NCBI GenBank assembly: GCA_965235115.1
Contig: OZ249439.1
Location: 33,666,001-33,730,000 of the forward strand
DNA length: 64,000 bases
From: Laetmonice hystrix
Lineage: Eukaryota
Direction of reading: 5' to 3'
Position 1 is the stretch's first letter. Every line of letters begins with the position of its first letter. This document shows positions 33,868 to 57,986 of this stretch, in pieces. The notes beneath the pieces are model-generated. The model did not search any database. It was given only the letters and a program-made list of their open reading frames with translations, and was not told the DNA's origin. A program made the translations under genes and the position numbers.

Positions 33868-35472
33868 ATGTCAAGCTTTCATCAACAGCCGAATGTTGCG
33901 AATGCCCAAATCAGGCCAACTTTTGCTCCACCACAATACCCGTTACCCATGGCTGGTACATTGCCCTTCACCGCCCAACAACAACCAGACATGTCTATGA
34001 TTCAAGATCAAAACAATGTACACACAAGACCTCCCACCCAACAATCGGGCCCACTGTTGGCAATGGGCTCTCAACCATGTGCTATGAATAAATCACAATG
34101 TCTAAACATACATCCAAATCTTGATGGGCTAACGCACAATGATAAAATGGAGCAGATGATGCTAAATCTCACCTCTGCCATATGCCAAGTTGCCTCCAGT
34201 ATGGAACAAATTAAAACGGCCAACAACTCGATGAGTCTTATGGTAGAACAATTATAGCGTGACGTCATAAACACTAAACAGGAACTTGATGGCACTCAAC
34301 AACTAGCACTTATCACCAGACAAGAACTTCAAGATCTCCAGGACCGAGTCACTCATTTGGACAATCGTGTTCTAACCAATGAACGTTTGGCCATGAACGC
34401 CACTTCAAGAACCTTATCCCTTGAAGGTAGAGTTACATCATCGGATCAGTTACCCCAGAATCAGCAAGCTACATATGGATCCACAAGTAACAGAGAGATG
34501 AGACTCATCATTAGAGGTGTCCCTGAGGATCCACAAGAGGATCTCGATGCTCTGGTGCAGCGCATCTTCACTACAATGAGCCTACCGTTTCGAGTCAGTG
34601 ATACAAAAGGTGTGACTCGATTAGGGAAACCCATTGAGAACAACACCTTCTCAATGGGTTCCCTACTCAACAGCAACGGTCACCCCAAATATGGACGACC
34701 CGTTATGTTGTCGCTCGACAAGATTCATCAGAAATACATAATCTTCTCACACCAGAAAAATCTGCGCAATCATGGCTTGTTTGGACGTGTGAGATTCTCT
34801 GATGACATGACTGAAGAAGAGTCTATGCACTACCGAGAAGCGAAGCAGATCTGCAATGCGATGAAACGTCACACAACTGATGTTAAGCTTCGCGGAACCT
34901 CAGTAATCATTGAGGGCAATGAATACCCATACTCCGACTTCAATAAACTGCCTTATGGTGTCACCCTCGAGTCCGCATCAACCATTGACACCTTGGACGG
35001 CATCGCTTTCCAGGGCCATTCCAGCCTTCTAAGCAATGTTTTTCCGTGTAAGTTGGAACTAAATGGAGAGAAAGCAAACAGTGTAGAGCAACTCTATGTT
35101 CTCAGAAAAGCGAAGGAATCCCTGGCCGACCCCACGCTAACTCAACAGATTAGAAATGCAACCTCCCCCTATCAGATAAAATGCCTCTCAAAAAGGATAC
35201 CATCTTCTGACAAATGGAATCAAATGTCTGTTGCAATCTTGAAGGAGTATGTGGAACTTAAATTCTTGAAATTCCCTGATCTCATGAGTAAACTCCAAGG
35301 ATGCAAGGGCGAGTTTATCTACGAGGCTACCCTTGAGAAACCCTATGGAGCTGGGTTTCTTAACGACGCACCCCAATTCTCGCATAATCAATTGAATGAT
35401 GAGTATGATAATTTAATGGGAGTTATCCTTCAAGACATTCGCAAGAAGCACAAACGTGTGGTTAAATCGTGA
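33868..35472 (+). pseudogene. LINE A ORF1: P/Q-rich N-terminus, coiled coil, RRM-like domain, C-terminal NADAR domain (about 35002-35445); one in-frame stop
   Basis: The ORF-track pieces 33775-34257 and 34357-35472 share a frame and are separated only by TAG at 34255-34257. ORF1-type motifs RLIIRGVPE, TRLGK, RPV, FSDDMT. NADAR motifs LSN.FPC, SVEQLY..RKA, W, LKF, IYEAT...YGAG, NLMGVILQDIR. Confidence 0.82.
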
Positions 35473-35737: not shown

Positions 35738-36385
35738 ATGTCCATACCACGCTTTCATTTCCTGCTTGCAGGCGACTCACGTTTACGAGGATGGCCTAGG
35801 GAAGTGAAGAGTCTTCAAAAGGAAATGGATTTATTTGACATCGAATTTCACTTCCACTATGTATCGGGCACTCGCTGCAAAAATCTAGTTGATGAAATCT
35901 ACATGTGCTCTGACTACAAGCAGTATGATGTTGTACATTTCTTAGCTGGGATAAACGAGTTCTCAACAAAACTACCGGGACACGATGTGCTACCGCGCTT
36001 CACAAATCCGAACACTGGCTTTGCGCACCTCGCTGAAGCGCGCGCGCGCCTGGATGCCATTGCCAGGTCTGTAGTGATTTGTGAGGTTATAGGCATGTCA
36101 TTTGAATTGTTTAATCACTCATTGGGAGGCTTTGGAAAACTCCAGACGGCGTTGAACAGTACTATCCTAGCAGTGAATGTCTTTGTTAGAGATCAAAACA
36201 CTGAACTTGGTGTTTTCACCCCATCGATGGAGCAACATGTACACAAAATCCGCCACGGAAAACGCAGCCATTTCTACTCTTCAACTCTCCAAGACGGCAT
36301 TCACTACACCAGTGACACCAAACGGAGATTCATCAAGCAAGTCCTCCGCACGGTGTACCAAAACATACATACCACATGCAATTAG
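35738..36385 (+). CDS. Stand-alone SGNH/GDSL-type esterase, 215 aa, intact
   Basis: Block I LLAGDSR, block II VSG, block III FLAGINE, block V LQDGIH: all four catalytic blocks present. ATG start and its own stop. Confidence 0.82.
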   Translation: MSIPRFHFLLAGDSRLRGWPREVKSLQKEMDLFDIEFHFHYVSGTRCKNLVDEIYMCSDYKQYDVVHFLAGINEFSTKLPGHDVLPRFTNPNTGFAHLAEARARLDAIARSVVICEVIGMSFELFNHSLGGFGKLQTALNSTILAVNVFVRDQNTELGVFTPSMEQHVHKIRHGKRSHFYSSTLQDGIHYTSDTKRRFIKQVLRTVYQNIHTTCN

Positions 36386-36890
36386 ATGATATATCACGGT
36401 CACAAGGACTCCTTTCGTGTGTAAATTTTTCTTTATTTTCTCACCAGACGTCGCCACCAACGAGTTGTGTTCCTATGACTCACCAAACTTTATACTACTG
36501 TCTGACACCAATACACTCTGCTTTGTGCCTGATATTTGCCATGAATTCGATACTTGAAGGGACAACCGATGTCAGTGAGTTACAACCTCCCTTTCTATCA
36601 TTTCGATACGTTCTATAATTTCTATAATGCTATATTTGTAATATTGCTCATTGCTATCAACCAACGGATATGTATATATATATTTGCTACAAGTATGGTT
36701 GACGAACGTATATCCGACGAAATTGCTGGGCGAAGAGTCCTCCCTCACCTGCCCCGTATCTGACCCTCTTGCTAGGTGTTAGATAATTACCTGTACTTCG
36801 GCACCCACCCCTGCAGCTTCTGCAATAGGGGAGTGGCACTGTTCCTACTATTGTTAGGCCTATATTCCTGGGTTATTCTCTTTTTCACAC

Positions 36891-39705
36891 ATGCCCCCAC
36901 CAGTATTATCGTCTAAAGGTTGCCGTATGGTGCATTTAAACTGCCAAAGCCTTGTTAACAAACCAAATTTAGTTAAACTTCATGTCACCCAATACTTACC
37001 GGACATATTTGGTTTATCAGAAACTTGGCTTAACACAGATCTACCTAACAGTCTATTTCTTATACCCAAATATGACTTCATCAGAGTTGATCGAGCCTGG
37101 AGTGCACCGGGGAAACCTAATATTAAGCGAGGAGGAGGAGTAGGCTTATACATCAAATCTGACTTACATTACTCCCAATTTGAATATGCTCACCTAAATA
37201 GTAGCACGAGTGACATTGAGATAGAGTGGGTAAGCATCCACCAACCTAACCAGAAAAAAATTGTAATTGGCAACCTTTATAGACCGCGCGACGGCGACAC
37301 CACAATATTTTGTAATTTATTGAGCAATATGGTCAACGAAATATCCTCAAGAAAGAATTCAGAAATTTTTGTATTAGGTGATTTCAACATCAATTATTCT
37401 AAAGCTGGGACACCTGCTAAACAAAACATCCAGGAATTTGAGTCAGTGACTGGTCTTAAACAACTCATTCATGAAACTACTAGATTTTCTGATTCTAACT
37501 CATGTATTGATCTGATTTTCTCGAACTCTGACACCATCTCACAGTCGGGTACTCTTCATATGAACATTAGCGATCACGAAGCCATTTTTGTTACAAGAAA
37601 GAAACTCGAGCATAAAGTCGGTCGCATAAACTCACAAGGGAGAACTTACTCGAAATACGACAGATTGAAATTTGTGGATTCACTGAGGAACATTGATTGG
37701 GAACCGTTTGATAGCATTACTGATCCGAATGAGGCATGGATCTTCTTGAAAGATACTATCACTAACGCCATAAATAAACAGTGTCCAATCAAACAAATTA
37801 AAATAAAAAATAAAAATGACCCATGGATGTCACAGGAACTAATTGAGCTAATAAATGATAAAGATAATGCCAGGCGGGAAAGCAAAAAAATCTAATCTGA
37901 CCGACGATTGGACAAGAGCACGGCGCCTTAAACATCTTGCAAACAGAGCCGTGAATAATGCCAAACGTGATTTTATCTTAGAGAATCTTCAAAATCAAAA
38001 TGATGCTAAAAGTTCTGGGAATGTATCAGTTCTATCCTTCCAAAAGACAATCCTCATACTACAATTAATCTCACGCATCAAGACACTGGACTCCCCATTG
38101 ACCCTGATAAGAGTGCCAGTACTTTAAATGAATTTTTCACGGGCATAGGTCCTAAATTAGCAGTCAAATTCACAGATCCTTGGGACACCGTCCTTCGCCG
38201 CTACTAAGTCAGAAATTTGTAATTGTGATATCAAAGTAGACGAAGTAAATCGTCCGCTTTAAACAACTTGTCTTCAATGATCCTTAAACACGCTTTCCTA
38301 GGTATACGGGATAAAATTACTCATTGTTTCAATTTGTCTTTAAAAACTGGAATTTTCCCTTTGGATTGGAAAATGGCCAAGGTAGTTCCCTTGTTCAAAG
38401 GTGGCGATGCAGCAAATGTCTCTAACTATCACCCCATATCTCTGTTACCCCTCCGAGGTAAACTACTAGAGAAATTGGTTCATACTCACCTTGAGAAATA
38501 TATTGAGGATCATCACATCCTAAGCATCCATCCGGGAGGTTTTAGACAAGGGCATTCAACACTTCAATCAATTGGAGAGCTAACTGATGATATTACCTAC
38601 AACATTAACAACCTGAATAGCACACTAGTAACTTTTATCGATCTCAAAAAAGCTTTTGATACAGTAGACCACGATATCATGCTTAAAAACCTACACAGAT
38701 TGGGTATCAAAGGCTCGACACATAACTGGTTAAGTTCGTATCTCTCCAATAGATCCCAACAAACAGTTGCAAATAACTCAACCTCAACAGCACTTCCCAT
38801 TAATTGCGGAGTGCCACAGGGTTCTATTTTAGGACCATTCCTCTTTCTAATTTATATTAATGACCTAGGTATGACTCTCCACTCAACATCTTCTAAACTT
38901 TATGCTGATGATACAGCTCTATACGTACATGGGGATAACATTCTGGATCTAGGAACTCGACTGCAGCAGGGCCTAGATGACCTTGACCACTGGTGCTCAC
39001 TGAACAAGTTGTCAATAAATGCTTCCAAGACTAAATGCATGTTTTTCCCGGCTAAGCGCCCAAGTTCAACTACTATACTCCCCAAATTAATCCTAAATGA
39101 TCAGACTTTAAACTATGTAAATCAATATAAATACCTAGGTGTCACTCTGGACAATAAATTGACTTTTCAACCTCATCTGCAACAGACAATAAAATTAACA
39201 TCCCATAAAATTTACCTCCTGGCCAAAATTCGACATCTCTTGACGGATGAAGCCGCATTGGCTGTCTACAGATCCAAGATAATTCCCTATTTCGACTATG
39301 GAGACATTCTTTTTCATAATAGCAGTGCTACAAAATTGAAGAAGCTTCAACGACTCCAAAACCGCGCCCTGCGAATTTGCCTGAGATCAGATCCACTCAC
39401 GCCCGTAGATATGCTACATAATAGAGCAAATATGCCATATTTATCAAATAGAAGAATTGCTCACATCAGGACTTTTGCCTTCAAAAGAGCCACGCTTCAA
39501 AAATACCTATGTCCCCCCACTAGGAATACAAGAGCAAATGCTGCAAAGCAATTAAAATTCTGGTTAGCACACAATAATCAAGTAGCCTGCTCAGTAAATA
39601 ACACATGCGCACGTGAATGGAATCTCCTATAAGAAACATTGTAAATTTGTATCATTCAAGCACTTCAAATATAGGCAGAAATTATGGCTGAAATCAACTA
39701 TACCA
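36891..39705 (+). pseudogene. LINE A ORF2: APE endonuclease + reverse transcriptase, frameshifted at about 37890 and 38130-38270
   Basis: HLNCQS, LSETWL, RGGGVGLY, GNLYRP, GDFN, CIDLIF, SDH; NYHPISLL, GFRQGHST, FIDLKKAFDTVDH, GVPQGSILGP, LYADDT, YKYLGVTLD. Confidence 0.93.
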
Positions 39706-41976: not shown

Positions 41977-43767
41977 CGTCTCGTTTGTGCCCGTGGGGAC
42001 TTATCCATAGGCGGCGGAACCGGGGGGGAGGGGGGGGGGGGGGGGGGGGGTTAGTGGCAACCTCGCAATGAAAAGTGTGCATGGTAGGATTTAATAGGCT
42101 TCACCCACGCAGGGGCAGATCCAGATGGGTGGAGGTAATTCTCCCCCTTGAAAATGACTATCCAATCTTTTCCCACCTTACTTTGCTCTTCTTTAAACTT
42201 TCATTGATCCCCCCTCCCCAAATTACCCCATATGTACACACTTTCATGCTTTGAAGCAATTTCCATGAAAATTTTGTGTCCAGATACCGTAACTTACGGC
42301 CTCCCCAAATGAAAAAAGTCGGGGACAATTCCCGAACCCCCTCCACGGGCGGATCCAGGTTTGCGCCAACGGGGGTGTTGCGAGGGGCCAGGGGGCGCCG
42401 CTTTGTGTGAACAAAAAGCAGGAAAAAGGACAAATTATTTCGTAACGGGTTGTTGCAACCCCGGTAGCTCCCCCCCCACCTTAAATCCACCACTGCCCTC
42501 CCCTTCCTCACCGCATGAACGTTTCCATGGAGGAAAACGCTGAGTTGACATTTTATTTTTCATTTTTTTCTGGGGGAGGGACCCCAGGACCCCAGCGCCC
42601 CCCCCCCCCCCGCTCGAGGCTTTGGCCTTCAGCGCTTGCATAGCCCGCATTTCAAATCTTGGAGCTTGTGACCTATGTCATTCGAAGATTTCAACATGGC
42701 CGACTGAGCACACACCTCAGAGTCAGCTCCTCCACATTACCTGTAAATTCTTAGCCTCACGTGCACACTGGATATTATTAACATCTCAACACCGACCTCT
42801 TACCTTGCTAAAACCAGTGGGAACTACAAAAATGCCAAGACCCAAAGAAAAAGCTGGAAAAAAGGGCGAACAGAGTAACGACGGCGACGACTCCTTGCAA
42901 GTGAGTGATATTACACTAACTAATACAACTGGTGCGGACCCCGTTGGCCTCAACGATCTCATGCGGGAAATCCTAAAAACCCAAAAAGGGAATGATCGCC
43001 TACAAAAAAACCTGGCGGACGTTGTCTCATCTATTGCGGCCACAAACGAAAAGTTAGACTCTCACATCAAGTCAGTGGAATCAATTGTCAGTGCCGTGAA
43101 TACCAAATGTGACGCACTTGATGTGCGGATTGAACAGTGCGAAGCAAGCAACTCACAACTCTCGGACCAGCTGAACGACGCACACGCCAAAATCAAGAAA
43201 CTTGAAACGAAATTGAACTCTATTGAAACAAAGTTAGACGCATATGAGAATGATAGGAGAAGAAAAAACATCATAATCGAAGGCTTATCTGAGGGGAACG
43301 AGAATGTCAGGGCTACGGTAACAGATCTGCTCAATGACCTGAACGTTGAGTTGGGGGTCTGTACTATGGAAAGCGTGTACAGGCTTGGCCCTAAGAAACA
43401 AAACACCACCCGCCCAAGACCTATCAATGGTGAAATTCCCATCACAGAATGCAAGACAGGAAATATTCAAACATGTAGCTGAATTAAAAGGCAAGACGAA
43501 ATGGGAGCATGTATATATCACAGACGACCTGACCCCACAGGCAGCGAGTGAGCGCCGTGACCTGCGGGCAATCGCGGCAGCTGCCCGGCGACAAGGCATC
43601 CATGCTAAAATTAAAGGCGGCGCTATAATTATTGATGCCAGGAAATTTTCCTACAAGGACATTAACGATCTTCCCCATGGCCTGTCGTTAGAGTCTGCAA
43701 AGATGGTTGAAGTCAAGGACGGGCTCGCATTCCAGGGGCACCACGCATTTCCCTCCAATATACATGT

Positions 43768-46700
43768 GGGCCAGTTTTTCTAGAAATGTACAATTCGCCC
43801 TCAGCGGCCAAGAGAATATGGAATTTTTAAAACTTTTCCCAACCTATATCATTTGCATTGATTATGATAAAGGAACATTCTATCTTTCTGAAAAAGTTAA
43901 TTATACTCAGGAATTCCCATCCAGTCAGTTTTTAGAGCCCTCAAAAAAGATGTACTTCGTTTTCGTGGAACGTGAGTAAGATTTTGGACATTGCTTCAGA
44001 TATTTGCAATTTCCTTCTCTTGTATTTAAATGAACAAAGTTATATTTGGCCCATTAAATTTTAACAACATTCCCCTGATATGTGCCAAATATGAACAATA
44101 TGGGGCAAATATGAACTTATGAAACAGTTTGCCAAAATATAGGTCTGAAATTGCCAAAATTCCTGGATCATGTCCATCAGATATTCACAATATTCTATAT
44201 TCTCTAGTTCTTTTTAGGTGCCAAATATGCATGTTAAAACTGTTTTATTAACTTTTCACACATCTTATTATTATAAAACAAGCATTATATTTCATTTCTA
44301 TCCGATTTCCATGTTGCAGTAAGCTAATAAATTGACACCTATTATTATTACTCACGTTCCCAAAAAGGTTACTCACGTTCCGCCAAGTCCATACTTTTAT
44401 CAAAAGCAGACTAAATAAGATCGAAAACGCCCAAAAAGTTTTATTTAGACTGTAAACATATCAAATTTATTTTATCTGTGAAAACTTCATCAGAGGCACA
44501 TAAATTTCAAAAATGTTCCAACAAAGAAAAAACTTCACCGATGAAAATTACTTTGCAATTTCTCACATGAATTTTCTCCCTTGAAAAACTCTGAATAATA
44601 AAATATTTTTACACCAATTGCATGCTCAAACCCTCCTGTACATGATTCAATCAGTTAAAATTCGTTGATTTTGCATTACATGGCTGTGAAGCCCTTGGAA
44701 TAAGAACATTTGATATATTACTCACGTTCCCTAAAAAAGTTTCTCACGTTCCTCAAGGACATCAATTTTCCCAAAGGCACTTATGAAGGTCAAATATGAT
44801 CCAATACTCTCGAAAATTTATATTTAAACCATAAAAATGTTACATTCCTTGATTTTATCATGGAAAACTTCATCATAGCCCATAAATTCCCAATATGTTA
44901 CCTTGAAGAAGAGACTTTGCTGATTAAAATTATTTTGCAATTTCTCGCATGAATTTTCTCCCTTGAAAAACTTGGAATAACAAAATAGTTTTACAACAAT
45001 TGCATTCTCAAACCCTCATGTACATGATTCAATCAGTTCAAATTCGTTGACTTTGCCTTGCCCTGAACTCCCCCCCCCCCCTTCAAATTCGTTGACTTTG
45101 CCTTGCCCTGAACTACCCCCCCCCCCCCCCCCCGACTTCCGCCTTCTTCTTTAGCCTCTAGTCCAGCTGGGACTCTGTATTCATCCTCCTCCTCATGACT
45201 GCGAAACTTGTGACCTATGAAAATACTTAAACATGTTATAAAGGCTCAAACAAACAAAATGGAATATATACATGTTTAAAATAAGTCAATGTCTTGGTGG
45301 ACCCAGGATTGTTCCTATTTTTAATGTAAGATTAACAAGCTTGTGAAGCTTATAGCCCCCACCACGAACTATGGATTCTTGAAAAAACGATGCACGACTT
45401 CAATTGATCTTTGAAGGGCAAAGGAAATATTGTCAAATGAAACTTTGTAAACTTAGTAAAGTTCTATGCAGTTATATGTACAGCTTGATGGCGTTATCCG
45501 GCGTAAAGATGCATGTGTCTGCATTAACTATGCAGTTATGTACAGTTTGATAGTGTTATCCGACATGAAGTGTTGTAGACATGCTTGACCTCGATTGACC
45601 TTTAGAGGTCAGTTATGTACAGTTTGATAGCGTTGTCTGGCGTGAACCAACTGAGTAGGGACAAATTATCTGTGGGTCCAGGAACTATGCATACTTTTGG
45701 CACGCTTGTTGCCCCTCATGCCTTCTGTCAGCAAGAATGAAATCCAGAAAATGTTATTGCTTCGAATTTCTTTAAATCCAAGATGGCCACCAAGCAGCCA
45801 TTTTTAATGATATATTTGACCTGTGTCCTCCTTAGACTGTCCCTGGTTATTATGTAATGTTTCATGCAAGATTAGATGTTGTTATTTTCAACTGGTTTGG
45901 AGGTACAGGCCATTAAAATATGCATGACCTTGATTGACCTTTCAAGGTCGCTCAAGGTCATGGAAAATGACGCCAAATGAAACTTCATATATGACTTCCT
46001 ATCTATCAATAATAATAACTGTTGCCTTATCTTGCACCGTTTTCGAGATATGAGTCAAAGCAGTGTTATGGGGGGGGAGTAAAATATTAATATGGCCGCC
46101 ATGTCGCCATATTTCCTCTGATCTAGAAATACATTGGCATATACATTGCCCCTCATATACACCTTCTTTCCACCAAATTTGAAAGAAATCGGGATCGTTT
46201 TGTCTGAGTTATTGTTCCAAATGTGTTTACATCCAAGATGGCCACCACGCGGCCATTTTGACTGATGTCTAAAATATATTTGACCTGCCTCATCCGTGGA
46301 CTGTCCCGGATCATTATGTAATGTTTCATGCAAGATTATGTCGTTATCTTTAACTGTTTTGAAGATCCAGGCTATTGCAAATATGCATGACCTTGATTGA
46401 CCTTTCAAGGTCGCTCAAGGTCATCGAAAACGGCGCCAAATGAAACGTCATAATTATATGACTTCCTATCTGTCAATAATAATAACTATTGCCTTATCTT
46501 GCACCGTTTTGGAGATATGAGCCAAAGCAGTGTTATAGGGGGGAGGTAAAAATATTAATATGGCCGCCATGTCGCCATTTTTGCTCTGATCTGGCAATAC
46601 ATTGGCATATACATTGCCCCTCATATACACCTTCTTTCCACCAAATTTGAAAGAAATCGGGATCGTTTTGTGCGAGTTATTACTCCAAATGTGTTTACAT

Positions 46701-49452
46701 CCAAGATGGCCACCACGCGGCCATTTTGACTGATGTCAAAAATATCTTTGACCTGCCTCATCCGTGGACTTTCCCGGATCATTATGTAATGTTTCATGCA
46801 AGATTATGTCGTTATCTTTAACTGTTTTGAAGATCCAGGCTATTAAAAATATGTATGACCTTGATTGACCTTTCAAGGTCGCTCAAGGTCATCGAAAATG
46901 GCGCCAAATGAAACGTCATATATGACTTCCTATCTATCAATAATAGGAACTATTGCATCATCTTGCACCGTTTTCGAGATATAAGCCAAAACAGTGTCAT
47001 TGTGGGGGTCAAGAAACAAATATGGCCGCCATCTCGCCATTTTGGATCTGAATTGAAATTTTATTGTGATGCATATTGGCCCTCATTATGCCTCATCCCT
47101 GCACCATGTTTGAAAGAAATCGTCATTGTTTTGGCTGAGTTATTGCTCAAAATGTGTTTACACTCAAGATGGCCGCCAAGCGGCCATTTTGAATGATATC
47201 AAAAATCTGTTTGACGTGCATCATCCGCAGTTCATCCCTGATCCTTGTGTAAAGTTTCAAAGAAATCGACCCATACACTTCTGAGAAATCGCTGTCTACG
47301 GACATACGGAGGGACGGAGGGACGGACGGACGGAGGTCGAATTATAAGCCCCCCGTTGTGGGGGCTAAAAAGGAGGGACAGGCCTGTGGGACAGTCAAGT
47401 AGAATTGCCAAAAAAGTGCCACTTCAAAACCAATCAACTATCCAGGGGTTGGGGCCTGTTCTACTTTTGGAACGTGCTTTTTGCATCTCAAAAAGCCACC
47501 AGCCACTAGATAAGAGGCTGGACACACAAGGCCTGGCATTCCATTGTTACGCAGGGTCGGTATTCAACCCAGCCATGTCCAGCACCAAAAAATGAAATAT
47601 GTCAGAATGACCAAAAAAAATAAATTTCTAAATTTGGATTCATTTCTGTGGTATATCTAAAGGTAATGCATAAACACATCTGAATTTAGAATATTATTGG
47701 GATTGAAATATTTTTTCAATTTGTTGTTGTTGTTGTGGAGTGTTGTAGAGCAGTTGTGGAACGTGAGTAAGTTTTTTTTACCCAACGCTGAGAGAAGACA
47801 ACATATAAATATCTATTCAAATACATATATTTTGAATCTTGTCATCATTAGTATTATGAAATAACATAGAGGAAGTCATGTGAGCCTGCTGTCGTTTATA
47901 AAAAACAGGGTTTGTGATATTTGGAGGAACGTGAGACACTTTTCTTACTCACGTTCCCGATTCATGAATTTAATGCATTTTTCTCAGCGTTTACATTAAT
48001 GAAAAGGCCAAACATAGGTTCATTTTATAAAAGAGATAATGAACAAATGATTTAATTGTGTTTAATAATAAATGATAAGATAACAGCACTTCAAAACAGC
48101 GATGATATTGGACAATAAAGATAGAGGGAACGTGAGTAAGGGGTATAGTAAGGGGTATATTCGAACCTACGATGGACAACGTTAAACCACCTAAACGGAG
48201 ACACATTTATATCTTTATTCATTCATATTTATGCACAATTACTTGGCCAAAGTTGAAAAATAACATCAAATATAACCTCTGAAATGGCTCACTATTCATA
48301 TTACTCACGTTCCACTTCTCACGGAATGAAACGACCTTGAGTCGTTTGAAAGCAGCCAGCGAAATGCCTGCTGTATTACCGCTCAAGCACGAGGCACTAT
48401 TGGAAACATCAATCTTTCCCAAAGTTAAACAAACATTGCAAGAAGGGTTAATTACATTTCTATATTTTGTCAATTAGATCCAAAACGATGCCTTTCACAT
48501 CCGGACTGGCATTTGCCAACATGTATACATCCATAATTCTGTAGAAATGCTTTATAATGTTTCAAAAAGTGCTAGATACTTACCACGCTTTCGACTTTCC
48601 TCTTTACCACAACGCGCTGTGGCGTTCTATCCAGTGAACAGGGTAAAAATGCGGTGAGATGCTTTCCCCCATTACTCACGTTCCCATCTCTCTCACGTTC
48701 CAACATTCGAAATTTCTATCATAAATGCAGTTCAAAGGGCCGTTTCTTCTGAAGTAATCTTATTTATAGAATGAATGATCTAGCAAGGAATGTAATGAAA
48801 TGTTAAATGTGCAAGATATTATCTTATGTGGAAGTTAAATGAGATCTTCCATCTGAGGAACGTGAGAAACATTTTTGGTATAAAACCAGACTGCTGAGAT
48901 TTGGGAGTTAATAACTTTTTCACTGCTCTGGCTACACCAATAGGAATTTAACACAATATAGAGAAATACATGTAGATTACAGCAATGGATATACTTCTGT
49001 TTTATAAGTGTTCAATGTGATAAAGTATAATAGAAGAAAAAGAAGTTTTGCACGTTCCTAAAAATTGACACAAAATCTCCATCCTCCATCAAAAAAACCC
49101 CCACCACCTGGTTGGCCTGGAATACACCTTGAATGTCAATATAGCCATGATAGATCAATGAGCAAGTATCAAAATAAGGATCCCAATGTGTTTGTAAACG
49201 ATATAGGGTGTCAAAGCCTTAATTTATGAGCAAAAAAGGTAATTTTCCTCAATTTTTCAGTTTCTATTAGTTGCAGTTTGTTAGGAGTTGTACCAAAGTA
49301 TAACAATGTATATATTTTATGAAAGCTTAGGATGTCCTGCATGAAATGTTACCAACAAGGGGACCCTAGGCGGTAGTAGTCATGATTTACAGGCTTGTGA
49401 AGAGATCAAGGTGTGATTTTGGCCAATTGTACATTTCTAGAAAAACTGGCCC
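43768..49452. mobile_element. Non-autonomous TIR transposon with 4-bp TSD and GGG termini (Sola2-like)
   Basis: 28-bp perfect TIR GGGCCAGTTTTTCTAGAAATGTACAATT. ATGT at 43764-43767 and 49453-49456. About a dozen TTACTCACGTTCC / GGAACGTGAG motifs. No transposase ORF seen. The Sola2 label rests on the termini and TSD length only. Confidence 0.75.
45334..47369 (+). mobile_element. HINE/Helentron-associated element carrying about 3 tandem 465-bp units
   Basis: Starts AACAAG with TATAGCCCCC near 45351. GACCTTGATTGACCTTTCAAGGTCGCTCAAGGTCAT at 45926, 46389 and 46857. (GGAC/GGAG)n at about 47300-47337. 3' hairpin AGCCCC...GGGGCT at 47347-47364. Confidence 0.75.
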
Positions 49453-49950
49453 ATGTACCCATGCACAATTACATACAACGGAGGCTCTTACACTTCTGCA
49501 GAGCAGCTTTATCAAGCGGAGAAGGCGCGCTACTGCCACGACCCTGTATCCGAGGATCTGATTTGTAAGGCTGAAAGCCCGTACGAAGCCATGATACTTG
49601 GTAAACTAATCAAATCTACCGGCGAATGGGACAAAAACAAATTAAAGGTCATGAAACGGGTTGTCACACTTAAGTTCGATCAAAATGACGCCATTAGGCA
49701 GAAATTGCTTTCAACAGTTGGTAACCTGTATGAGGCCACTCTTGACAGGGTCTACGGTTGTGGGTTCACGCTCGGCCAGTGCCACATGATCTCACAAGAC
49801 AATGTCAAAAGCAACAATCACCTGGGCAAAATCCTGTGCGAATACAGAGGGGCATTGAAATATTGCTTATGTTAGTGTTAGTTAACTTGTAAAGCTTGTA
49901 ACGTTTATAGCTCGGCATTCGGGAACTAGATTAATATTAAGAACGGTTTA

Positions 49951-50580
49951 TTGTCATATATCTATATTGTTCAACATTTTGCCACACATCCAGAGCCTAA
50001 TCCCCTGTTTGTACCCTACTTACAGCATTCGAGCCAATCTATATTGGTCCTCGCCGACTCACGTGGGAGAAACCTGCAACAAGCTCTAAACAAAGAACTG
50101 AGCGGACAAAGCCTACCGGCCCGATTCAATGTACAAGTAAAGGTTTTCAGCGGGGCCAAAATCCAAGATTTGACAACCTATGCAAAGACCCACCTGGACT
50201 AGGCCCGCCCACTTGACTATATTTACCTGTTTGGAGGTGTAAACCACCTATCTGTGAAACATCGCTCAGGCGTAGTAACGGCCGCGTTTGATGACATTTC
50301 CAATCTTGTAGACACGATGACTGATTACTTCGAAAATGCCCGATCTGATTTATCTCCCTTTGCTAAGAATGTTGTGATTTGCCAGCTTGTGGGTATCAAC
50401 CTAGATGTATATAAGAAACAAAGCAACTCCCAAACCTTTGGGCAACATATTATCGACCAGTCCTTGCCTCACGTTAACCATGCCATTAACCTTATGAATC
50501 GTGATGGCAATGTTCGAAGTCCCTGGTTGCAAACCACGGTCCATGCTAAAATACATCATAGGCTCTGCCATAAGTTCCCA
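49951..50580 (+). pseudogene. LINE B SGNH esterase ORF; one in-frame stop, 3' end replaced by a tandem repeat
   Basis: ILVLADSR, VFSGA, YLFGGVN, VVICQL.G are collinear with copy A. TAG at 50200-50202 is in frame. No DxxH block seen. No in-frame ATG. Confidence 0.75.
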
Positions 50581-51215
50581 ATTACCGGGAATGTGTGTGT
50601 TTAATTATACATTGTTTGTTGAATCAAATCATATTGGGATCCCCTCAAGATTGAACCATCGATCTCACTGCAGAAGGTGGTACATTGACGGGGAATGGGT
50701 GTACTTGTATATACATTGTTTGCCGAGGTATACTGTGTTAAGATTCCCTCAAGTTGGAACCACCGATCTCACTGCAGAAGGTGGCCCAATTACCGGGAAT
50801 GTGTGTGTTTAATTATACATTGTTTGCTGAATCAAATCATATTGGGATCCCCTCAAGATTGAACCATCGATCTCACTGCAGAAGGTGGTACACTGACGGG
50901 GAATGGGTGTACTTGTATATACATTGTTTGCCGAGGTATACTGTGTTAAGATTCCCTCAAGTTGGAACCACCGATCTCACTGCAGAAGATGGCCCAATTA
51001 CCGGGAATATGTGTGTTTAATTATACATTGTTTGTTGAATCAAATCTTATTGGGATCCCCTCAAGATTGAACCATCGATCTCACTGCAGAAGGTGGTACA
51101 ATGGCGGGAATGGGAGTATTTTTGCTGTTAGACAAACTCAATCCCCTGTATAGTGTATAGCTTGTCTAAGACCTCACCAAGCCTGAATCACCGATCTCAC
51201 TGGAGAAGGTGGCCC
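50577..51215. repeat. 208-bp tandem repeat (about 2.6-3 copies), each unit a dimer of about 104-bp subunits
   Basis: CCCAATTACCGGGAAT at 50577, 50785 and 50993. CCTCAAG..GAACCA.CGATCTCACTGCAGAAG occurs twice per unit. Confidence 0.9.
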
Positions 51216-53698
51216 GGGCGAAATGCATTTATCTATCTGGAATGTGTCCCAAGGAGGATACCGACCCCAATTGTAGGATGTTGAGAACGTATCCAACTAA
51301 TGAAGGCGTGTAAATAGCTTAATATTGTTCACTGCTATATGACGCACGCGGCTTGTAGATAAATATGTATAATGCTGCTGATAGGTTTTCAAACGGAGGG
51401 GCTGGCTTCCACCCATGTGTAGTCGGCCACTAAGGTATTACGACTCTCTCATGACTCAGTCTGCTGTTTATGACCCTGGTAGCAACATATGCATACACCA
51501 AGGTCATCACAACATCAGTTTAGGTACTTATATTTGGGATACGATGAAGATAGCGTTAAACGTACGTAGAACATGCTATGCTGAATTCACTCTCACATGG
51601 AAGACCTAACATTGGTAACTAGTCGTAAGGGCCTACACTTAGCACATCTGAACACTAGGAGCATCTTCAGGAAGGTAGACCTTCTCAAAAACTATATGGC
51701 TAACTCGAGACTTGACGTTCTATCTATCTCGGAAACCTGGCTTAGCACTCAACTATCTGATAATATGATTTCCATCCCCGGCTTTAACCTAACTAGATCC
51801 GATAGAACCTGGAACTCTCAAGGAAACCATGGCTCCAGCCCCAAAAAAGGAGGGGGCGTTGCGACTTTTATTAGATCAGGGATTCCTTTCTCGGAAACCG
51901 ACCTATGCAATCTTAACCTCAGTAACTCAAATATCGAGACCCAATGGATAACGCTTAAGCCGATAAACCAACGAAAAATTATAGTCGCCACAGTGTACAG
52001 ACCTCCCCAAGGTAATCCCAAATCTTTTATAGAAGTATTGGCGCCGCCTTATCAGAAGTCAGTCTAACTAGGCAAGACGTCTTTGTCTTGGGCGACTTTA
52101 ACATTGACTACCTCGATAAAAAGAACGAAAACACAAAATTGTTATCTAACCTGATCAGATCTAATGGCCTCCGTCAACTGATTACCGAACCTACTAGATT
52201 ATCTGATAGGAGATGTAGCTGCCTGGACCTGATCCTGACCAACTCGGAATTTATTGCTAACTCAGGACTAGTGGACTGTAACATTAGTGATCACATTATG
52301 GTTTACGTGACTAGGAAGAAAGGAGTATCTGTTAAAAAGAAAGTGTCCTTTACCGGGAGATCCTACAGGCAATATAACGCTACGGATTTTAAAGATCGCC
52401 TTAGGGACATTGATTGGCGGGGATTCGATGCCGCAACACACCCAGATAGAGCCTGGAATATTCTCCTTAGTAGTATTAAGGAGATAATTGACAAGATGTG
52501 CCCATTAAAAATGTTTAAAGTCAAACAAGAAAAAGACCCTTGGATTAACCCTGAGCTACTCGAGCTTATTAAAGACAAGGACTATGCCCTGAAACGGGCT
52601 CGGCGCACTAAGAACCCGGAAGACCGTGAAATAGCTAGAACCTTAAGGAACCTTACACTGGGTAGAGTACGTAGGGCCAAGTCTGATTTTATTAAAGACA
52701 ATCTCGAAGCTAATAGTGACAACAGCAAGAAAGTCTGGCAAACAATTAAACAAGTGCTACCCAATAATAAATCGCAAGCAATTACCTTTAATCTTACTGA
52801 TGCAGAAACAGATAACATTGCAGAAACAGATAACATTGTTGAAGAACATCGCACTGCAGATTATGTAAATAACTTCTTTGTTAATATTGGACCTAAACTT
52901 GCGAGGCAGCACAATACCAGATGGGAGTACAAGGGTACAAAATGTGACCACAGAATGGGTGACATCCTGACAACCATTGACGAAGTCATTAGCCTGACAA
53001 AACAAATAAATATCTACAAAGCGTCGTCAGTTCATACCATTTCTAGTAAGGTTTTAAAGGATGCCTTCCTTGCTGTCCCCGATAAGATAGCTCGTCTGTT
53101 TAACCTATCATTCACGACCGGGATTTTTCCTCAAGACTGGAAGTGTGCTACCATTATTCCCTTTTCAAAAAGAGGGTAACAAAGCCGACGTTTCAAACCT
53201 AAGACCGGTCTCACTCCTCCCCATCCCAGGGAAACTAATGGAGAAGGTGGTAGGTAACAGACTTCGCAACCATCTCGAAGAAAATAACCTGCTAGACGAG
53301 CGACAAAGTGGATTCCGTCCGAACCACTCTACCACTGGCGCAGTGGTAAACCTTGTAGATAAACTTTTTAAAGCACTGAATGACGGAGGAGTCACGATTG
53401 CCACTTTCATAGACCTATCAAAAGCTTTTGATACGGTTAATCACTCGATTCTCTTAAAAAAAATAGATTTTTTAGGAGTCAAAGGTCTATCGCAACAATG
53501 GTTCACTGATTATCTCACCAACCGTTCCCAATGCACATCGTGCAACAACGCTCTCTCAGAGAAAAACGAAATAGTCTGTGGAGTACCGCAAGGATCGGTT
53601 CTGGACCCTCTACTCTTCCTAGTTTATGTAAATGATATGTTTACTGCCATACGTTTTTCAAACATCCAACTCCATGCAGATGATACCGTAGTCTTTAA

Positions 53699-56600
53699 AG
53701 CGCTTGTGCACAGTCGTTTTTCTGATGTAATACAATTCAGATCCTATTCCTAACAATGTTGGCGTTGGAATTTTAAAAATACATTGCACTATTTCTGAGA
53801 TATTGCGAAAAATAGCACTGATATTCCATAGCAACAGGCCCCTAGTTACGGGTCGCTATTAATCGGCTCCTGTCGGGAAACTTCGGCGCGTGACGACATA
53901 CTCAGAACACCGCTCGGCACGCTTGCTGTCACGACCCACCAGATCCAGTATGCCGAGTCGGTGTGTGGCTATGTTTTGCAGCCATTCTAGCAGTAAACAA
54001 TATTTGAATGGCCAAAGGACAAGGAAAGAACACACTGTGGTAGTGTGGACGATGTGTGCTGTGTGCACGACATGATTTTACAGAGGATTGCTTTGACAAC
54101 AGTAGGCTAACAACAGGCACTGGGCAGTGTACACCCAAGTCTACACGCTCTACAGACTACACTACCGTCTACAGTACAGTCAAGCCAAGGTCAGTTTTAC
54201 TAGACTGATTAGCCTAGATCAAAACTATAGTACTTAGGATCCTGTTTTTAGGATGTCTAGGCCCTAGATCTTATTCTAGACAGCTAGTCTAGATCGACTG
54301 CTGATTCTATCAGCTCCCCGGCAAGCGCTGAGCGGACAGGCTCACCGCAACAGGTAGTGGGCGGCGGACCGCATCCAGACAGTGCCCAGCACATCATCGG
54401 TCGCCGCTCGCCAGAGCCTAGCCCTAGCCCTAACGTGTTAGCCTTGGGGAATATCGATTCTTTACTGTCCAATTTAGCAAACCATCTGCAAGATCTTGTA
54501 AATAGATCTATTTGTTTTCTGTTTATTAATAATAATATTATACTGCAAGACAATGTAACACTGAGCTGGGGATCAAAGAAAACCAGCGGTGCCGATGAAC
54601 TCCAGCTGGAGGCAGGGTAATTTTATTTTTTTTTTAATTAAAAAAAAGAGATGAGGCTCTAAAATAGCCTAAATTACCTAAGCTTGGGGGTTTGTCACGT
54701 TTGAGCTTTGCCTCTCCTGTACCCCCAACCAGATCCTCTGTTTAACCACTGTGCTGGCAATGCAAATTCTGGTACATTTTATTTCCAGGTTATGTTGGAG
54801 ATTGTCTTCAAACAGTCCTGCCCCTCATTGACAAGCCTCAAAAACGTGGTTGTACACTGGCTGCTGCAACCTGACAAATGGACAGTCATCAGGGAGAAGA
54901 GATCACGTTTTGCCAAGCCCAAGGACTTTACTTCTCACATTCAGTGTAAATAAATTAAGCGGTTGACAAGTGTTTTATCAAATTTATGTGAATTTGGCGT
55001 AGTCTAATCGAATTTTGGAAATCGGAATGTTCCAGTCAGGAAGCCAGGTGTTGTTTCAGTTCAAGACGTGCTCTTGTTTCTGTTTGGACGAGGGTACTGA
55101 AATCCCGTGTGTGTGACACCGACAGTGTCTGTTGGAAATGCTTCCTAATTTAAGCTAGTAATAAGTGAAACATGATGGGTGGCCCCAACACCACCTGACA
55201 AACAGTCTGTAAGCCGTATAATGATAATTTCTGCAAAAAAGACGAAATATATATGGAAAAGGTTGTACATAAAAGTTCATAATAATTTAGGACTACAAAG
55301 GAAGGCATAATAAAAAAAAGAAGAAGTAAAGTGTAGCCTATACATTGTCGCTATGGTCTCTTTTCTTTCACATTTCAGGTTTAAATAGTGTAAAAGAAAT
55401 CCGTAAGTTGTTAACCTTCAAATACGGTACATTGAAACCAAATATTCTTGGAAAAAGGTATTTCTAACAATTTGGTTATCTTGTATAGACGGGACAGTGT
55501 ACTATAGAAACTATTGCACTGATGACAGTTAAAAAGAGCTATATTATAATACCGTATATGTCCTATTTGCCGCGCATGCGCGTGTGCAGAAGGGGGGTGC
55601 GCGGCAAATGAATTATTTTAACGTTAAGGGGGCATTTTCTTTCCAAATAGGTCCCCAATATGAGTCCCCAATATGAGTTTTCCCAAATTTCCACCCCTGA
55701 CAAACACATTGGGTTTAAAAAAATGCTGGGGTGCGCGGCGAATAGGAGGTGCGCGGCAAATAGGACATATACGGTACTAGTATATTCCTATCAAACACTG
55801 CAAAACATAAACTCAACTCAAAAGGAACAACCAGTATAATAAAATTGATTTTTGTAATTCTTGTAAATGGCCTGTTGTAAAATGTTCTATGAAATATACC
55901 GTGTATGGTGCTATCAAAACTATTGTGCCATAAATAATGCCTGTCCTAGGGGCCCACATAACCAGGTTTTTAGGCCCAAAAAATGTCAAGAAAGTTGTCT
56001 AAAACCGAACATCACATTGTAAGAATTAGAAATTGAGCAGGGTTCATAAATAAATAAAATTCTGATGATACGGGCACGTGGCCTATAAAGTATAATTAAT
56101 CAGCATATGGACGTGGCATAGACTGATGATAGAGTTAGTTATAAATGTGCTAAAACTCCAGCAATTGTCGTAGAACCATCACATCAAGGCAAACTGGCCT
56201 AAATCCAGGATGGAGTGTAATACATTGATGGTAGGGCTACACTTCCTTTCCCTAACCCATCTATTAACTTCGCTAGTTTTGAGGATGCAGGGACTGATCC
56301 TGGTACGTGTTGGGGGGGGGGGGGGTTATTTGTACTTGATGTTGTAAGTATTATCTGTGTCAATTTGTGTATGATGGGGTGAATCAGCAATGTGTATGTA
56401 TAAATGAAAAATAAAAAAATATTTTAAACAAATAAAAAGGAAAAAAAGGTTCTTAATATTTTTAAGACTCCTTTAAAGGGGGGGGCAGGGTTTCATATAG
56501 AGGACGGGGGGGGGGGTAAATCTCCTGCATAACTCGGAGGGATAATCCCCCCCCCCCAGCAACCTTTAATGGCTTTATTTTAAAAGCAGGCAAGCAACCG

Positions 56601-57982: not shown

Positions 57983-57986
57983 TTAA

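What the first reader, a model, noticed from the sequence alone, without database searches (positions are those of the whole stretch)
42832..49875. A second, highly divergent LINE has the same ORF1-NADAR fusion, hidden by a 5.7-kb insertion
Removing 43768-49452 joins LAFQGHHAFPSN to MYPCTITYNG. This recreates the linker-NADAR boundary seen in copy A (LPHGLSLESA...DGLAFQGH...SN..PC versus LPYGVTLESA...DGIAFQGH...SN..PC); 4 extra bases at the junction are a separate finding. The two ORF1s are homologous but differ at most positions, so they are separate families. The fusion is therefore likely old and inherited, not a one-off capture. Copy B keeps the fuller motif set (EQLYQAEK, EATLD..YG.G, NHLG.IL..YR).
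Basis: partly seen in the sequence, partly recalled or inferred. Interest (0 to 1): 0.8.

Follow-up and report, generated by a model that had tools for sequence, protein, structure and literature searches.

The report
LINE ORF1 protein fused to NADAR
A broken copy of a jumping gene (LINE) whose RNA-binding protein ends in a NADAR enzyme domain is really there, split by a later transposon; the fusion is old, inherited and present in hundreds of copies in this animal genome, and had been noted in one sentence for oyster LINEs.

Summary
Window 43768-49452 is a 5,685-bp TIR transposon with a 4-bp ATGT target duplication. Two intact paralogs of the same LINE family read straight through the site (...HHAFPSN-MYPCTITY...).

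Correction: the transposon splits the NADAR domain itself, about 25 residues in, not the linker boundary.

Copy B (42684-59900) is a dead full-length copy, 98-99% identical to an intact copy. That copy has three ORFs:
- ORF1, a human-L1-type ORF1p (coiled coil, RRM, CTD) with a C-terminal YbiA-type NADAR domain;
- a weak GDSL-like esterase ORF;
- a 960-aa APE-RT ORF2.

Copies A and B are 35% identical in ORF1 and 39-45% in ORF2. They share a LINE-only clade in both the NADAR tree and the RRM-CTD tree. The two ORF1 halves co-diverge (40 of 79 splits shared; chance 0.2). NADAR divergence tracks RT divergence. The catalytic glutamates are invariant, and NADAR is as constrained as the RRM. The inherited-fusion reading is supported.

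The genome holds at least 150 NADAR hits (741 candidates), paired with two ORF2 clades (this one and L1/Tx1-type). One capture versus two is unresolved.

Prior art: one sentence on oyster Tx1 LINEs (PMC12477816). A de-ADP-ribosylase counter-defence role is inferred, not shown.

The parts
42684..59900 (+). Copy B: a full-length but dead copy of LINE family B, carrying three later insertions
   Evidence: 98-99% identical, block by block, to the intact paralog C19:19048676-19057574 (L002+L059, element about 6,975 bp). No poly(A) tail; the 3' end reads ...CTTTTAAAG.
42832..43759 (+). ORF1-B 5' part: N-terminus, coiled coil, RRM, CTD and the first strands of the NADAR fold, up to ...FPSN. An extra A at 43426 shifts the frame.
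   Evidence: The domain layout comes from the AlphaFold2 model of the intact paralog and the profile hit to human L1 ORF1p 2YKP at 1.5e-15.
43760..43763 (+). Four extra bases (ATAC) that are absent from intact copies
   Evidence: Origin unexplained. The repaired-looking site contains the palindrome ACATGT, which would fit an excision footprint (a guess).
43764..43767 (+). Left copy of the 4-bp target-site duplication ATGT (right copy at 49453-49456)
43768..49452 (.). 5,685-bp non-autonomous TIR DNA transposon. TIRs lie at 43768-43799 and 49421-49452, and there are subterminal GGAACGTGAG repeats.
   Evidence: The genome holds at least 34 matches to its left end. Other copies of 3.2-4.5 kb have 4-bp duplications ATAC or ATAT. 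Its four longest internal ORFs (77-117 aa) have no Pfam hit.
49453..49875 (+). ORF1-B 3' part: the NADAR domain from Pfam position 30 to the end. A 2-bp deletion at 49849/49850 changes the last residues.
   Evidence: Pfam NADAR E 1.3e-23. The catalytic Glu and Lys align to the Glu and Lys of 8BAU's conserved SSEQ..K motif, which the paper numbers E43/K50 (PMC11543638). Indel.
49951..50604 (+). Middle ORF (GDSL/SGNH-esterase-like), here in two pieces. It is 240 aa and intact in the paralog.
   Evidence: The Pfam Lipase_GDSL hit is only E 0.012, below the cut-off. Copy A's counterpart is 25.5% identical (E 8e-12).
50577..51121 (+). Tandem repeats of about 208 bp in the spacer between the esterase ORF and ORF2. 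There are fewer units here than in the C19 copy.
51597..53698 (+). ORF2-B 5' part: APE endonuclease and the first half of RT, with frameshifts (-1 at 52032/3, +C at 53159) and an in-frame +18 at 52801-52818.
   Evidence: The intact ORF2 is 960 aa.
53699..58554 (.). A second insertion of 4.86 kb inside RT, with a 6-bp target duplication CTTTAA. No terminal repeats were found.
58555..59900 (+). ORF2-B 3' part and 3' UTR, interrupted by a 263-bp foldback MITE at 59191-59453
34357..35472 (+). Copy A ORF1 (RRM, CTD and NADAR), used as the comparison partner. The NADAR domain is residues 222-364. An in-frame stop at 34255-34257 cuts off its coiled-coil N-terminus (33775-34257).
35738..39632 (+). Rest of copy A: esterase-like ORF 35738-36385, APE 36891-37895, RT 38268-39632

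Best explanation
Shown: window 42684-59900 is a dead, full-length copy of a three-ORF LINE family that still has intact copies elsewhere in the genome. Its ORF1 protein is a human-L1-type ORF1p (coiled coil, RRM, C-terminal domain) that continues in the same reading frame into a YbiA-family NADAR domain. In this copy a 5.7-kb cut-and-paste TIR transposon landed inside the NADAR-coding part, so the domain looks like a free-standing ORF 5.7 kb downstream.

Shown or strongly inferred: the ORF1-NADAR fusion was inherited by families A and B from a common LINE ancestor, not captured twice. It has been kept under purifying selection while the families diverged until synonymous sites were saturated. 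The same ORF1-NADAR module accompanies two unrelated ORF2 clades in this genome, the 960-aa type of A and B and an L1/Tx1 type. It also occurs in other invertebrate assemblies and in marine metagenome contigs.

Inferred mechanism (about 35-40% likely): ORF1p trimers coat the LINE RNA in cis, and so bring three copies of a nucleobase ADP-ribosyl hydrolase to the RNA and to the cDNA at the integration site. There the enzyme would strip ADP-ribose from guanine (and perhaps cytosine) bases placed by a host or foreign ADP-ribosyltransferase. This would be a counter-defence like the orphan NADARs of T4-like phages.
For: Junction and insertion.

Copy B anatomy.

Domains: Pfam NADAR 84-86 bits against a cut-off of 35.1. 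A profile of 49 ORF1s against the PDB gives 8BAU 4e-32, YbiA 9e-25 and human L1 ORF1p 1.5e-15. The AlphaFold2 model has mean pLDDT 89.8. Foldseek finds 8BAU at TM 0.72 and 2YKO at TM 0.64. A trimer model scores 0.68 with best control 0.00; that mark was reached by 21 of 30 proteins solved as pairs and by 0 of 23 solved as single chains, and the pass may come from memory of L1 ORF1p.

Active site: the Glu aligned to the paper's E43 and the YbiA-type last-strand Glu are invariant in 12 of 12 diverse LINE NADARs; in the 49-protein alignment the first is invariant and the second nearly so (at least 90%). Lys or Arg sits at +7 in 9 of 12 (residue roles from PMC11543638 and PMC11125620).

Selection: NADAR pN is 0.21-0.31, about the same as the RRM-linker part and lower than the coiled coil. 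pS is saturated at 0.74-0.9. Two of three close pairs give dN/dS 0.28-0.37.

Co-descent: 40 of 79 splits are shared between the NADAR and RRM-CTD trees (chance 0.18), Mantel 0.60. The same clades appear in careful trees. NADAR and RT identities co-vary, rho 0.89.

Spread: at least 150 hits from 741 candidates. ORF1-NADAR plus ORF2 occurs in other assemblies. ESM Atlas clusters are annotated as annelid.

Mechanism: NADARs remove ADP-ribose from guanine in DNA and RNA (PMC11543638, PMC11125620, PMC11833690). Phage orphan NADARs neutralise DarT1 (PMC11825919).
Against: No enzyme activity, expression or host ADP-ribosyltransferase has been shown. No public RNA run holding the element was found. 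Searches of this genome with two Pfam models that I recalled as covering pierisin-type transferases (PF03496, PF01375) found nothing, but their controls were silent too, so this is uninformative. E. coli YbiA acts on riboflavin intermediates, so the substrate need not be a nucleic acid. In the NADAR-only tree the phage and bacterial sequences fall in two places inside LINE diversity, so a single capture for all LINE NADARs is not demonstrated. Window copy B itself is non-functional.
Confidence: 0.8

Rival explanations
1. Families A and B acquired NADAR independently (convergent capture), and the similar junction is coincidence.
For: The NADAR-only tree does not recover all LINE NADARs as one clade against phage and bacterial sequences. 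ORF1 modules are known to move between LINE clades (PMC4120745).
Against: A and B sit together in a LINE-only clade in both the NADAR tree (83/91) and the RRM-CTD tree (90/88). The sequence just upstream of the NADAR fold (LPxG...ExA) is conserved, with an invariant Pro in 49 of 49 ORF1s. The two ORF1 halves co-diverge.
Confidence: 0.03
2. The 49453-49875 ORF belongs to the TIR transposon or to a host gene fragment, not to the LINE.
For: In this window it stands directly against the right TIR and starts with ATG.
Against: Intact family-B copies have it in frame with ORF1 and have no TIR element. Three other TIR-element copies have unrelated right flanks. The ATG lies within the target-site duplication.
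Confidence: 0.01
3. The NADAR domain is active, but it works on a small molecule or an RNA-end product (NAD- or ADP-ribose-derived metabolites, YbiA-like N-glycosidase chemistry) rather than on ADP-ribosylated bases. For example, it might clear a by-product of LINE RNA processing.
For: It has the YbiA-family Glu signature. E. coli YbiA is a riboflavin-intermediate N-glycosidase, and NADARs in RNA viruses were proposed to act in RNA processing (as cited in PMC11543638 and PMC12477816).
Against: All YbiA/NADAR proteins tested so far hydrolysed guanine-ADPr (PMC11125620, PMC11833690). Fusion to a nucleic-acid chaperone argues for a nucleic-acid substrate. Neither point is decisive.
Confidence: 0.3
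4. The domain has lost catalysis and serves only as an extra nucleic-acid-binding or assembly module of ORF1p.
For: The Lys at +7 is His or Phe in 3 of 12 families. Copy A has Glu where others have Asp in the D..WG motif.
Against: The catalytic Glu is invariant and the YbiA-type Glu invariant or nearly so (at least 90%) across 49 highly diverged proteins with 23% mean column identity.
Confidence: 0.1

Closest known systems
ORF1 proteins of several Tx1 LINE families of Crassostrea gigas in Repbase, noted to contain YbiA-family NADAR domains (PMC12477816, one sentence)
   Same: A LINE ORF1 protein carrying a YbiA-type NADAR domain in an invertebrate. This genome also has ORF1-NADAR next to L1/Tx1-type ORF2s.
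   Different: Families A and B have a different ORF2 clade: 960 aa, no zf-RVT, and only 1e-14 to human L1 ORF2p, against 1e-103 for a Tx1-type partner. They also have an extra esterase-like ORF. The paper gave no domain architecture, phylogeny, copy numbers or conservation analysis.
Human and mouse LINE-1 ORF1p (PDB 2YKO/2YKP/2YKQ, 2LDY): type II ORF1p
   Same: The same order of coiled coil, RRM and CTD. Profile E 1.5e-15 and Foldseek TM 0.64-0.68. A parallel trimer is predicted.
   Different: A 145-residue NADAR enzyme domain is appended at the C-terminus. Pfam Transposase_22 is not hit by the single sequence.
Phytophthora nicotianae NADAR (8BAU) and E. coli YbiA (2B3W)
   Same: The fold (TM 0.72 and 0.65). 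The catalytic Glu and Lys and the YbiA-type last-strand Glu are conserved.
   Different: Those are stand-alone proteins. Sequence identity is only 23-25%.
Orphan NADAR of T4-like phages that neutralises the DarTG1 defence (PMC11825919)
   Same: A mobile genetic element carries a NADAR without a cognate toxin. This is the model for the proposed counter-defence role. 391 phage records carry relatives at 24-34% identity.
   Different: The phage proteins are free-standing, and many have His at the last-strand position (PMC11125620). The target transferase is known for the phages and unknown here.
NADAR at the N-terminus of Pol in one Ectocarpus Gypsy lineage (PMC12477816)
   Same: A retrotransposon-borne YbiA-type NADAR.
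   Different: It is an LTR element, the fusion is to Pol rather than to the RNA-binding protein, and its nearest relatives were reported to be bacterial.
Esterase-bearing ORF1p of CR1/L2 elements (ZfL2-1, PMC3905857) and the modular, reticulate ORF1s of the Jockey superfamily (PMC4120745)
   Same: A LINE 5' region carrying an accessory hydrolase. Type II ORF1 is known in the CR1, L2 and R1 clades, and ORF1 exchange between clades has been proposed.
   Different: Here the esterase-like module is a separate ORF, and the domain fused to ORF1p is NADAR, which those surveys do not list.

Membership tests
NADAR superfamily, YbiA family (PF08719) | Score above the Pfam gathering threshold | tested here: met
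   84.4 bits (window piece) and 86.1 bits (intact ORF1) against a cut-off of 35.1; copy A scores 55.1
NADAR superfamily, YbiA family (PF08719) | YbiA-like fold | tested here: met
   AlphaFold2 block-mean pLDDT 95-98 over the domain. Foldseek: 8BAU E 1.4e-9, TM 0.72, rmsd 2.6 A; 2B3W TM 0.65
NADAR superfamily, YbiA family (PF08719) | Catalytic Glu and phosphate-binding Lys (E43/K50 of P. nicotianae, E88/K95 of E. coli C7) | tested here: met
   Both align in family B. The Glu is invariant in the 12- and 49-sequence alignments; Lys or Arg is present in 9 of 12
NADAR superfamily, YbiA family (PF08719) | Glu in the last strand (YbiA family), rather than Asp (BC4488 family) or His (phage gp30.3), as defined in PMC11125620 | tested here: met
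   The Glu of the LYEAT motif is invariant in 12 of 12
NADAR superfamily, YbiA family (PF08719) | Hydrolysis of ADP-ribose from guanine bases | not testable with these tools
   Needs a biochemical assay
Type II (L1-type) ORF1p | Coiled coil, then a single RRM, then a CTD | tested here: met
   Helix 40-143, RRM 146-231, CTD to about 300. Profile hit to 2YKP/2YKO 1.5e-15 and 2LDY 2e-8. Foldseek 2YKO-2YKQ, best chains TM 0.59-0.68
Type II (L1-type) ORF1p | Pfam Transposase_22 (PF02994) hit | tested here: not met
   No PF02994 hit for the single sequence at E up to 0.05. Homology shows only at the profile and fold level
Type II (L1-type) ORF1p | Homotrimer through the coiled coil | tested here: inconclusive
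   Three-copy model score 0.68, best control 0.00, in-register heptad contacts 43-142. The mark was reached by 21 of 30 proteins solved as pairs and 0 of 23 solved as single chains. The pass may be from memory of L1 ORF1p
Tx1/L1-group LINE (the clade of the published oyster NADAR-ORF1 elements) | L1-like ORF2 with a C-terminal zf-RVT region | tested here: not met
   Family-B ORF2 scores 56 bits to human L1 ORF2p, against 352 bits for the Tx1-type L031 ORF2. It has no zf-RVT and is 960 aa rather than about 1,250 aa
CR1/L2-like (Jockey-superfamily) LINE | Placement of the RT among reference clades | not tested
   No named reference RT set was available, and homologue searches returned no names. 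Compact APE-RT ORF2, no poly(A) tail and an esterase-like ORF fit this group but do not prove membership
Cut-and-paste TIR DNA transposon (the 5.7-kb insertion) | Terminal inverted repeats, a target-site duplication, and many copies in different flanks | tested here: met
   33-nt TIR at 97%; 4-bp duplications in 4 of 4 copies examined; 34 genomic matches
Cut-and-paste TIR DNA transposon (the 5.7-kb insertion) | A transposase gene that would assign the superfamily | tested here: not met
   The four longest internal ORFs (77-117 aa) have no Pfam hit. The copy is non-autonomous and its superfamily is unassigned

The most novel reading that the evidence does not exclude
ORF1p-NADAR is an anti-restriction module. 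Lophotrochozoan LINEs of at least two clades would carry a nucleobase de-ADP-ribosylase on their RNA-coating protein because their hosts, or the hosts' microbes and viruses, mark retroelement RNA or cDNA by base ADP-ribosylation. That would reveal an unrecognised animal defence against retroelements and would explain why 'animal NADARs' exist at all, since many of them would be LINE genes.
Probability: 0.25. Interest if true: 0.85.

Novelty: new member of a known kind. Interest (0 to 1): 0.55.

Why it matters
The role of NADAR enzymes in animals is an acknowledged open question (PMC11125620). Here, at least 150 high-scoring NADAR hits lie in one animal genome, most of them in ORF1-sized open frames, and about 60 sit directly upstream of a LINE ORF2. 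All examined ones are fused to an L1-type RNA chaperone, and the active-site glutamates are conserved. This gives a concrete, testable setting: does a retrotransposon need to erase ADP-ribose from nucleic acids? It also adds NADAR to the short list of accessory enzymes in LINE 5' modules (esterase, PHD). The same ORF1 module travels with two unrelated ORF2 clades, which is a clean case for studying ORF1 exchange. For annotation, a stand-alone 'NADAR gene' in invertebrate assemblies may be a LINE fragment.

Tried and rejected
I used identity tables and short ORF1 fetches instead.
- The search for related loci with the NADAR alignment failed on both collections because no stretch was conserved enough.
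- Word-based homologue searches returned no names, so neither the organisms nor the ORF2 clade could be named. The run search gave coded organism names only.
- No RNA run holds the element, so nothing can be said about expression.
- Contigs from the reads collapse the family and do not bridge this copy's insertion junction.
- Searches of the genome with two Pfam transferase models that I recalled as covering pierisin-type enzymes (PF03496, PF01375) found nothing. The control genomes were also silent, so this is uninformative.
- C-terminal extensions of 160-345 aa in some foreign ORF1-NADAR proteins are not the esterase and have no Pfam hit.
- Supplements of PMC12477816 do not name the oyster families.
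- The 'DUF1768 + retrotransposon' literature search found nothing.
- Rejected readings: that NADAR belongs to the TIR element, that A and B captured it independently, and that A and B are Tx1 elements.


Full report
**1. The observation**

The ORF ending at 43783 carries ...DINDLPHGLSLESAKMVEVKDGLAFQGHHAFPSN up to base 43759. The ORF at 49453-49875 begins MYPCTITYNG and is a Pfam NADAR hit (E 1.3e-23, model positions 30-162).

Between them lies a 5,685-bp element (43768-49452):
- It is bounded by a 33-nt, 97% complementary inverted repeat.
- It is flanked by the direct repeat ATGT, at 43764-67 and 49453-56.
- Its left end occurs at least 34 times in the genome.
- Three other complete copies (3.2-4.5 kb) sit in unrelated flanks with their own 4-bp duplications, ATAC or ATAT.

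It is therefore a cut-and-paste TIR transposon. Its four longest internal ORFs have no Pfam hit, so this copy is non-autonomous.

Searching the window's own genome with the NADAR piece found intact family-B copies. In L002 (C19) and L003 (C3) a single 453-codon frame reads ...LAFQGHHAFPSNMYPCTITYNGG.... Their DNA at the site is TCCAAT|ATGTACCC.

The four extra bases (ATAC, 43760-63) are real in the assembly and absent from intact copies. Contigs made from the reads collapse the repeat family. They show the uninterrupted junction and do not bridge this insertion, so I could not verify ATAC independently.

One correction is needed. In intact ORF1 the Pfam match starts at model position 10, upstream of the insertion point. 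The 'linker' motif DG.AFQG....SN aligns to the N-terminal strands of solved NADARs. The transposon therefore cut the domain itself.

**2. Anatomy of copy B**

I aligned the window to the natural intact copy C19:19048676-19057574 (L002+L059). Copy B spans 42684-59900 at 98-99% identity.

Its lesions are:
- +A at 43426
- the extra ATAC
- the TIR element
- -2 bp at 49849/50
- fewer units of a roughly 208-bp tandem repeat (50577-51121)
- -2 bp at 51152
- -1 bp at 52032
- +18 bp at 52801-18
- +C at 53159
- a 4.86-kb insertion at 53699-58554 (target duplication CTTTAA, no terminal repeats)
- +24 bp at 58608-31
- a 263-bp foldback MITE at 59191-59453
- +6 bp at 59777

The intact element is about 6,975 bp and ends ...CTTTTAAAG without a poly(A) tail. 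It has three ORFs:
- ORF1, 444 aa from the first ATG (42832 in the window)
- a 240-aa ORF with only a sub-threshold GDSL-lipase hit (E 0.012)
- a 960-aa APE-RT ORF2

Several copies keep 964-aa open frames at 99-100% identity, so the family was active recently.

**3. What ORF1 is**

- A profile of 49 full-length relatives hits P. nicotianae NADAR 8BAU (4e-32), E. coli YbiA 2B3W (9e-25) and the human LINE-1 ORF1p trimer 2YKP/2YKO (1.5e-15, covering the end of the coiled coil, the RRM and the CTD).
- The AlphaFold2 model (mean pLDDT 89.8) shows a 100-residue helix (40-143), an RRM (146-231), a CTD and a NADAR domain (about 300-444).
- Foldseek returns 8BAU (TM 0.72, rmsd 2.6 A), 2YKO-2YKQ (best chains TM 0.59-0.68) and 2B3W.
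- A three-copy model of residues 40-300 gives an in-register parallel coiled coil. The score is 0.68 and the best control 0.00. That mark was reached by 21 of 30 proteins solved as pairs and 0 of 23 solved as single chains. The model supports a trimer but does not show one, and the pass may reflect memory of L1 ORF1p.

ORF1p is therefore a type II, L1-type ORF1p with an enzyme domain added at the C-terminus. Type II ORF1 is already known outside the L1 clade (PMC4120745).

**4. Is the domain kept functional?**

In the alignment to 8BAU, family B keeps three sets of residues (residue roles from PMC11543638 and PMC11125620):
- the Glu and Lys that the paper numbers E43 and K50
- the Glu of the last strand that defines the YbiA family
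- the Asp of the D..WG motif

Across 12 LINE NADARs that are 25-50% identical to B, both glutamates are invariant, and Lys or Arg stands at +7 in 9. In 49 full-length ORF1s with 23% mean column identity, the catalytic Glu is still invariant and the last-strand Glu nearly so, at 90% or more.

Between families, synonymous sites are saturated (pS 0.74-0.9). NADAR pN is 0.21-0.31, equal to the RRM-linker part and lower than the coiled coil (0.31-0.57). Two of three close pairs give dN/dS 0.28-0.37. The domain is therefore under the same constraint as the RNA-binding core.

**5. Inherited or captured twice?**

A and B are 35% identical in both ORF1 halves, 39% in APE and 45% in RT.

- On 83 ORF1-NADAR proteins from this genome and other assemblies, the NADAR tree and the tree of the 185 residues upstream share 40 of 79 splits. 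Label shuffles give a mean of 0.18 and a maximum of 2. The Mantel correlation is 0.60, against a maximum of 0.21 in permutations.
- Careful trees of 30 sequences give the same clades from both halves. A and B fall in one group of elements that all have the 960-aa ORF2 type.
- For 24 elements in which a NADAR hit lies 2-4 kb upstream of an RT hit, identity to B's NADAR and to B's RT co-vary (Spearman 0.89). I paired these from the tables by eye.

This supports co-descent of NADAR, the rest of ORF1 and ORF2 for the lineage that contains A and B.

**6. Scale and spread**

- The Pfam profile finds 741 first-look candidates in the genome. All 150 that were scored reach at least 107 bits, mostly in 400-480-aa frames.
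- About 27 lie upstream of the A/B-type RT. About 32 lie upstream of an L1/Tx1-type RT in 1,240-1,276-aa frames.
- The two ORF2 types are only distantly related. Family B scores 56 bits to human L1 ORF2p; the Tx1-type ORF2 of locus L031 scores 352 bits and has zf-RVT.
- On the ORF1 trees the ORF2 type is strongly clustered: 3 changes, against 7.2 expected, with 0 of 500 shuffles as low.
- There are exceptions (L076, P0064, P0088) that may be ORF1 exchange or nesting.

Elsewhere, ORF1-NADAR followed by an esterase-sized ORF and APE-RT, or directly by ORF2, occurs in several ENA assemblies, in Logan assemblies and on a Tara Oceans contig. ESM Atlas clusters of the same architecture are annotated as annelid. 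A 4,240-aa Haliotis rufescens model holds seven NADAR stretches. In a search of 1.84 billion representative proteins, 66 of the retrieved hits have the ORF1-like architecture.

**7. Origin of the domain**

The nearest stand-alone relatives found are phage and bacterial NADARs at 24-34% identity: 391 phage records, 38 plasmids and two phage-like contigs.

In a NADAR-only tree with ten of them, the outgroups fall in two places inside LINE diversity. An AU test does not reject a clean split between LINE and non-LINE sequences (p 0.17). One capture versus two is therefore open, and no donor can be named.

**8. Mechanism**

Shown: the architecture, the conservation and the inheritance.

Inferred: ORF1p coats its own RNA as a trimer and carries the hydrolase to the RNA and the nascent cDNA.
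- NADARs are the only known hydrolases that remove ADP-ribose from guanine in DNA and RNA (PMC11543638, PMC11125620, PMC11833690).
- T4-like phages use orphan NADARs against DarT1 (PMC11825919).

By analogy the LINE domain would erase base ADP-ribosylation. I put this at roughly 35-40%. A small-molecule or RNA-processing substrate gets about 30%, and a non-catalytic role about 10%. No host transferase was found, but those searches were uninformative. No expression data were available.

**9. Comparison with what is known, and verdict**

A 2025 paper on Ectocarpus transposons states in one sentence that ORF1 proteins of several Tx1 LINE families of Crassostrea gigas in Repbase appear to contain YbiA-family NADAR domains (PMC12477816). 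I found no other report. The kind of fusion is therefore known.

What this window adds:
- members in a different, three-ORF LINE clade
- the L1-type scaffold
- the large copy number
- co-descent
- active-site conservation

I rate it a new member of a known kind, with moderate interest. All comparisons used natural copies.

Noticed in passing
window 43760-43767: With the transposon and one target duplication removed, the site reads TCCAAT-AT-ACA-TGTACCC, which contains the palindrome ACATGT. This would fit an excision footprint from an earlier visit by a 4-bp-duplicating element, followed by re-insertion. It is only a guess.
   Followed up: partly
window 53699-58554: A 4.86-kb insertion inside the RT of copy B, with a 6-bp target duplication CTTTAA. 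No terminal inverted or direct repeats were found, and its nature is unknown.
   Followed up: partly
window 59191-59453: A 263-bp foldback element (near-perfect long inverted arms beginning GGGCCG...) inserted in the 3' part of ORF2 of copy B.
   Followed up: no
window 50577-51121; L002+L059 positions about 2625-3797: A tandem array with a unit of about 208 bp in the spacer between the esterase-like ORF and ORF2 of family B. The number of units differs between copies, and in the window the array creates spurious overlapping ORFs.
   Followed up: partly
window 34255-34257: Copy A's ORF1 has a single in-frame stop inside its coiled coil. As a result, the N-terminal 160 codons (33775-34257) appear as a separate ORF.
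   Followed up: yes
G000:C3:4046398 (L076) versus G000:C2:37640679 (L073): Two closely related ORF1-NADAR genes lie upstream of different ORF2 types, the 960-aa type and the L1/Tx1 type. This is either an ORF1 exchange between LINE clades or a nested insertion.
   Followed up: partly
G000:C1:23020367 and G000:C8:28856722: NADAR hits lying in open frames of about 1,650 aa. They may be ORF1-ORF2 read-through or single-ORF variants.
   Followed up: no
P0146; P0023 (Haliotis rufescens XP_048255699.1): A 682-aa protein with three tandem NADAR domains, and a 4,240-aa abalone gene model with seven NADAR stretches. They could be merged LINE ORF1s or true multi-NADAR proteins.
   Followed up: no
P0073, P0074, P0077, P0088 and others; L063:2662-3558: Some foreign ORF1-NADAR proteins have 160-345-aa C-terminal extensions, or are followed by a 298-aa ORF. 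These have no Pfam hit and no similarity to the esterase-like ORF.
   Followed up: partly
G000:C1:44258913-44265311: An ORF1-NADAR of another family (36% identical to B) is followed 5 kb downstream by a 5'-truncated family-B RT at 99% identity. This is an example of LINE-in-LINE nesting that can mimic chimeric elements.
   Followed up: no
L066 (ENA contig k119_22414, 169 kb): A phage-like contig with a stand-alone NADAR next to an NAD-dependent DNA ligase and near a weak PARP-like ORF. It might be an ADP-ribosylation conflict cluster.
   Followed up: no
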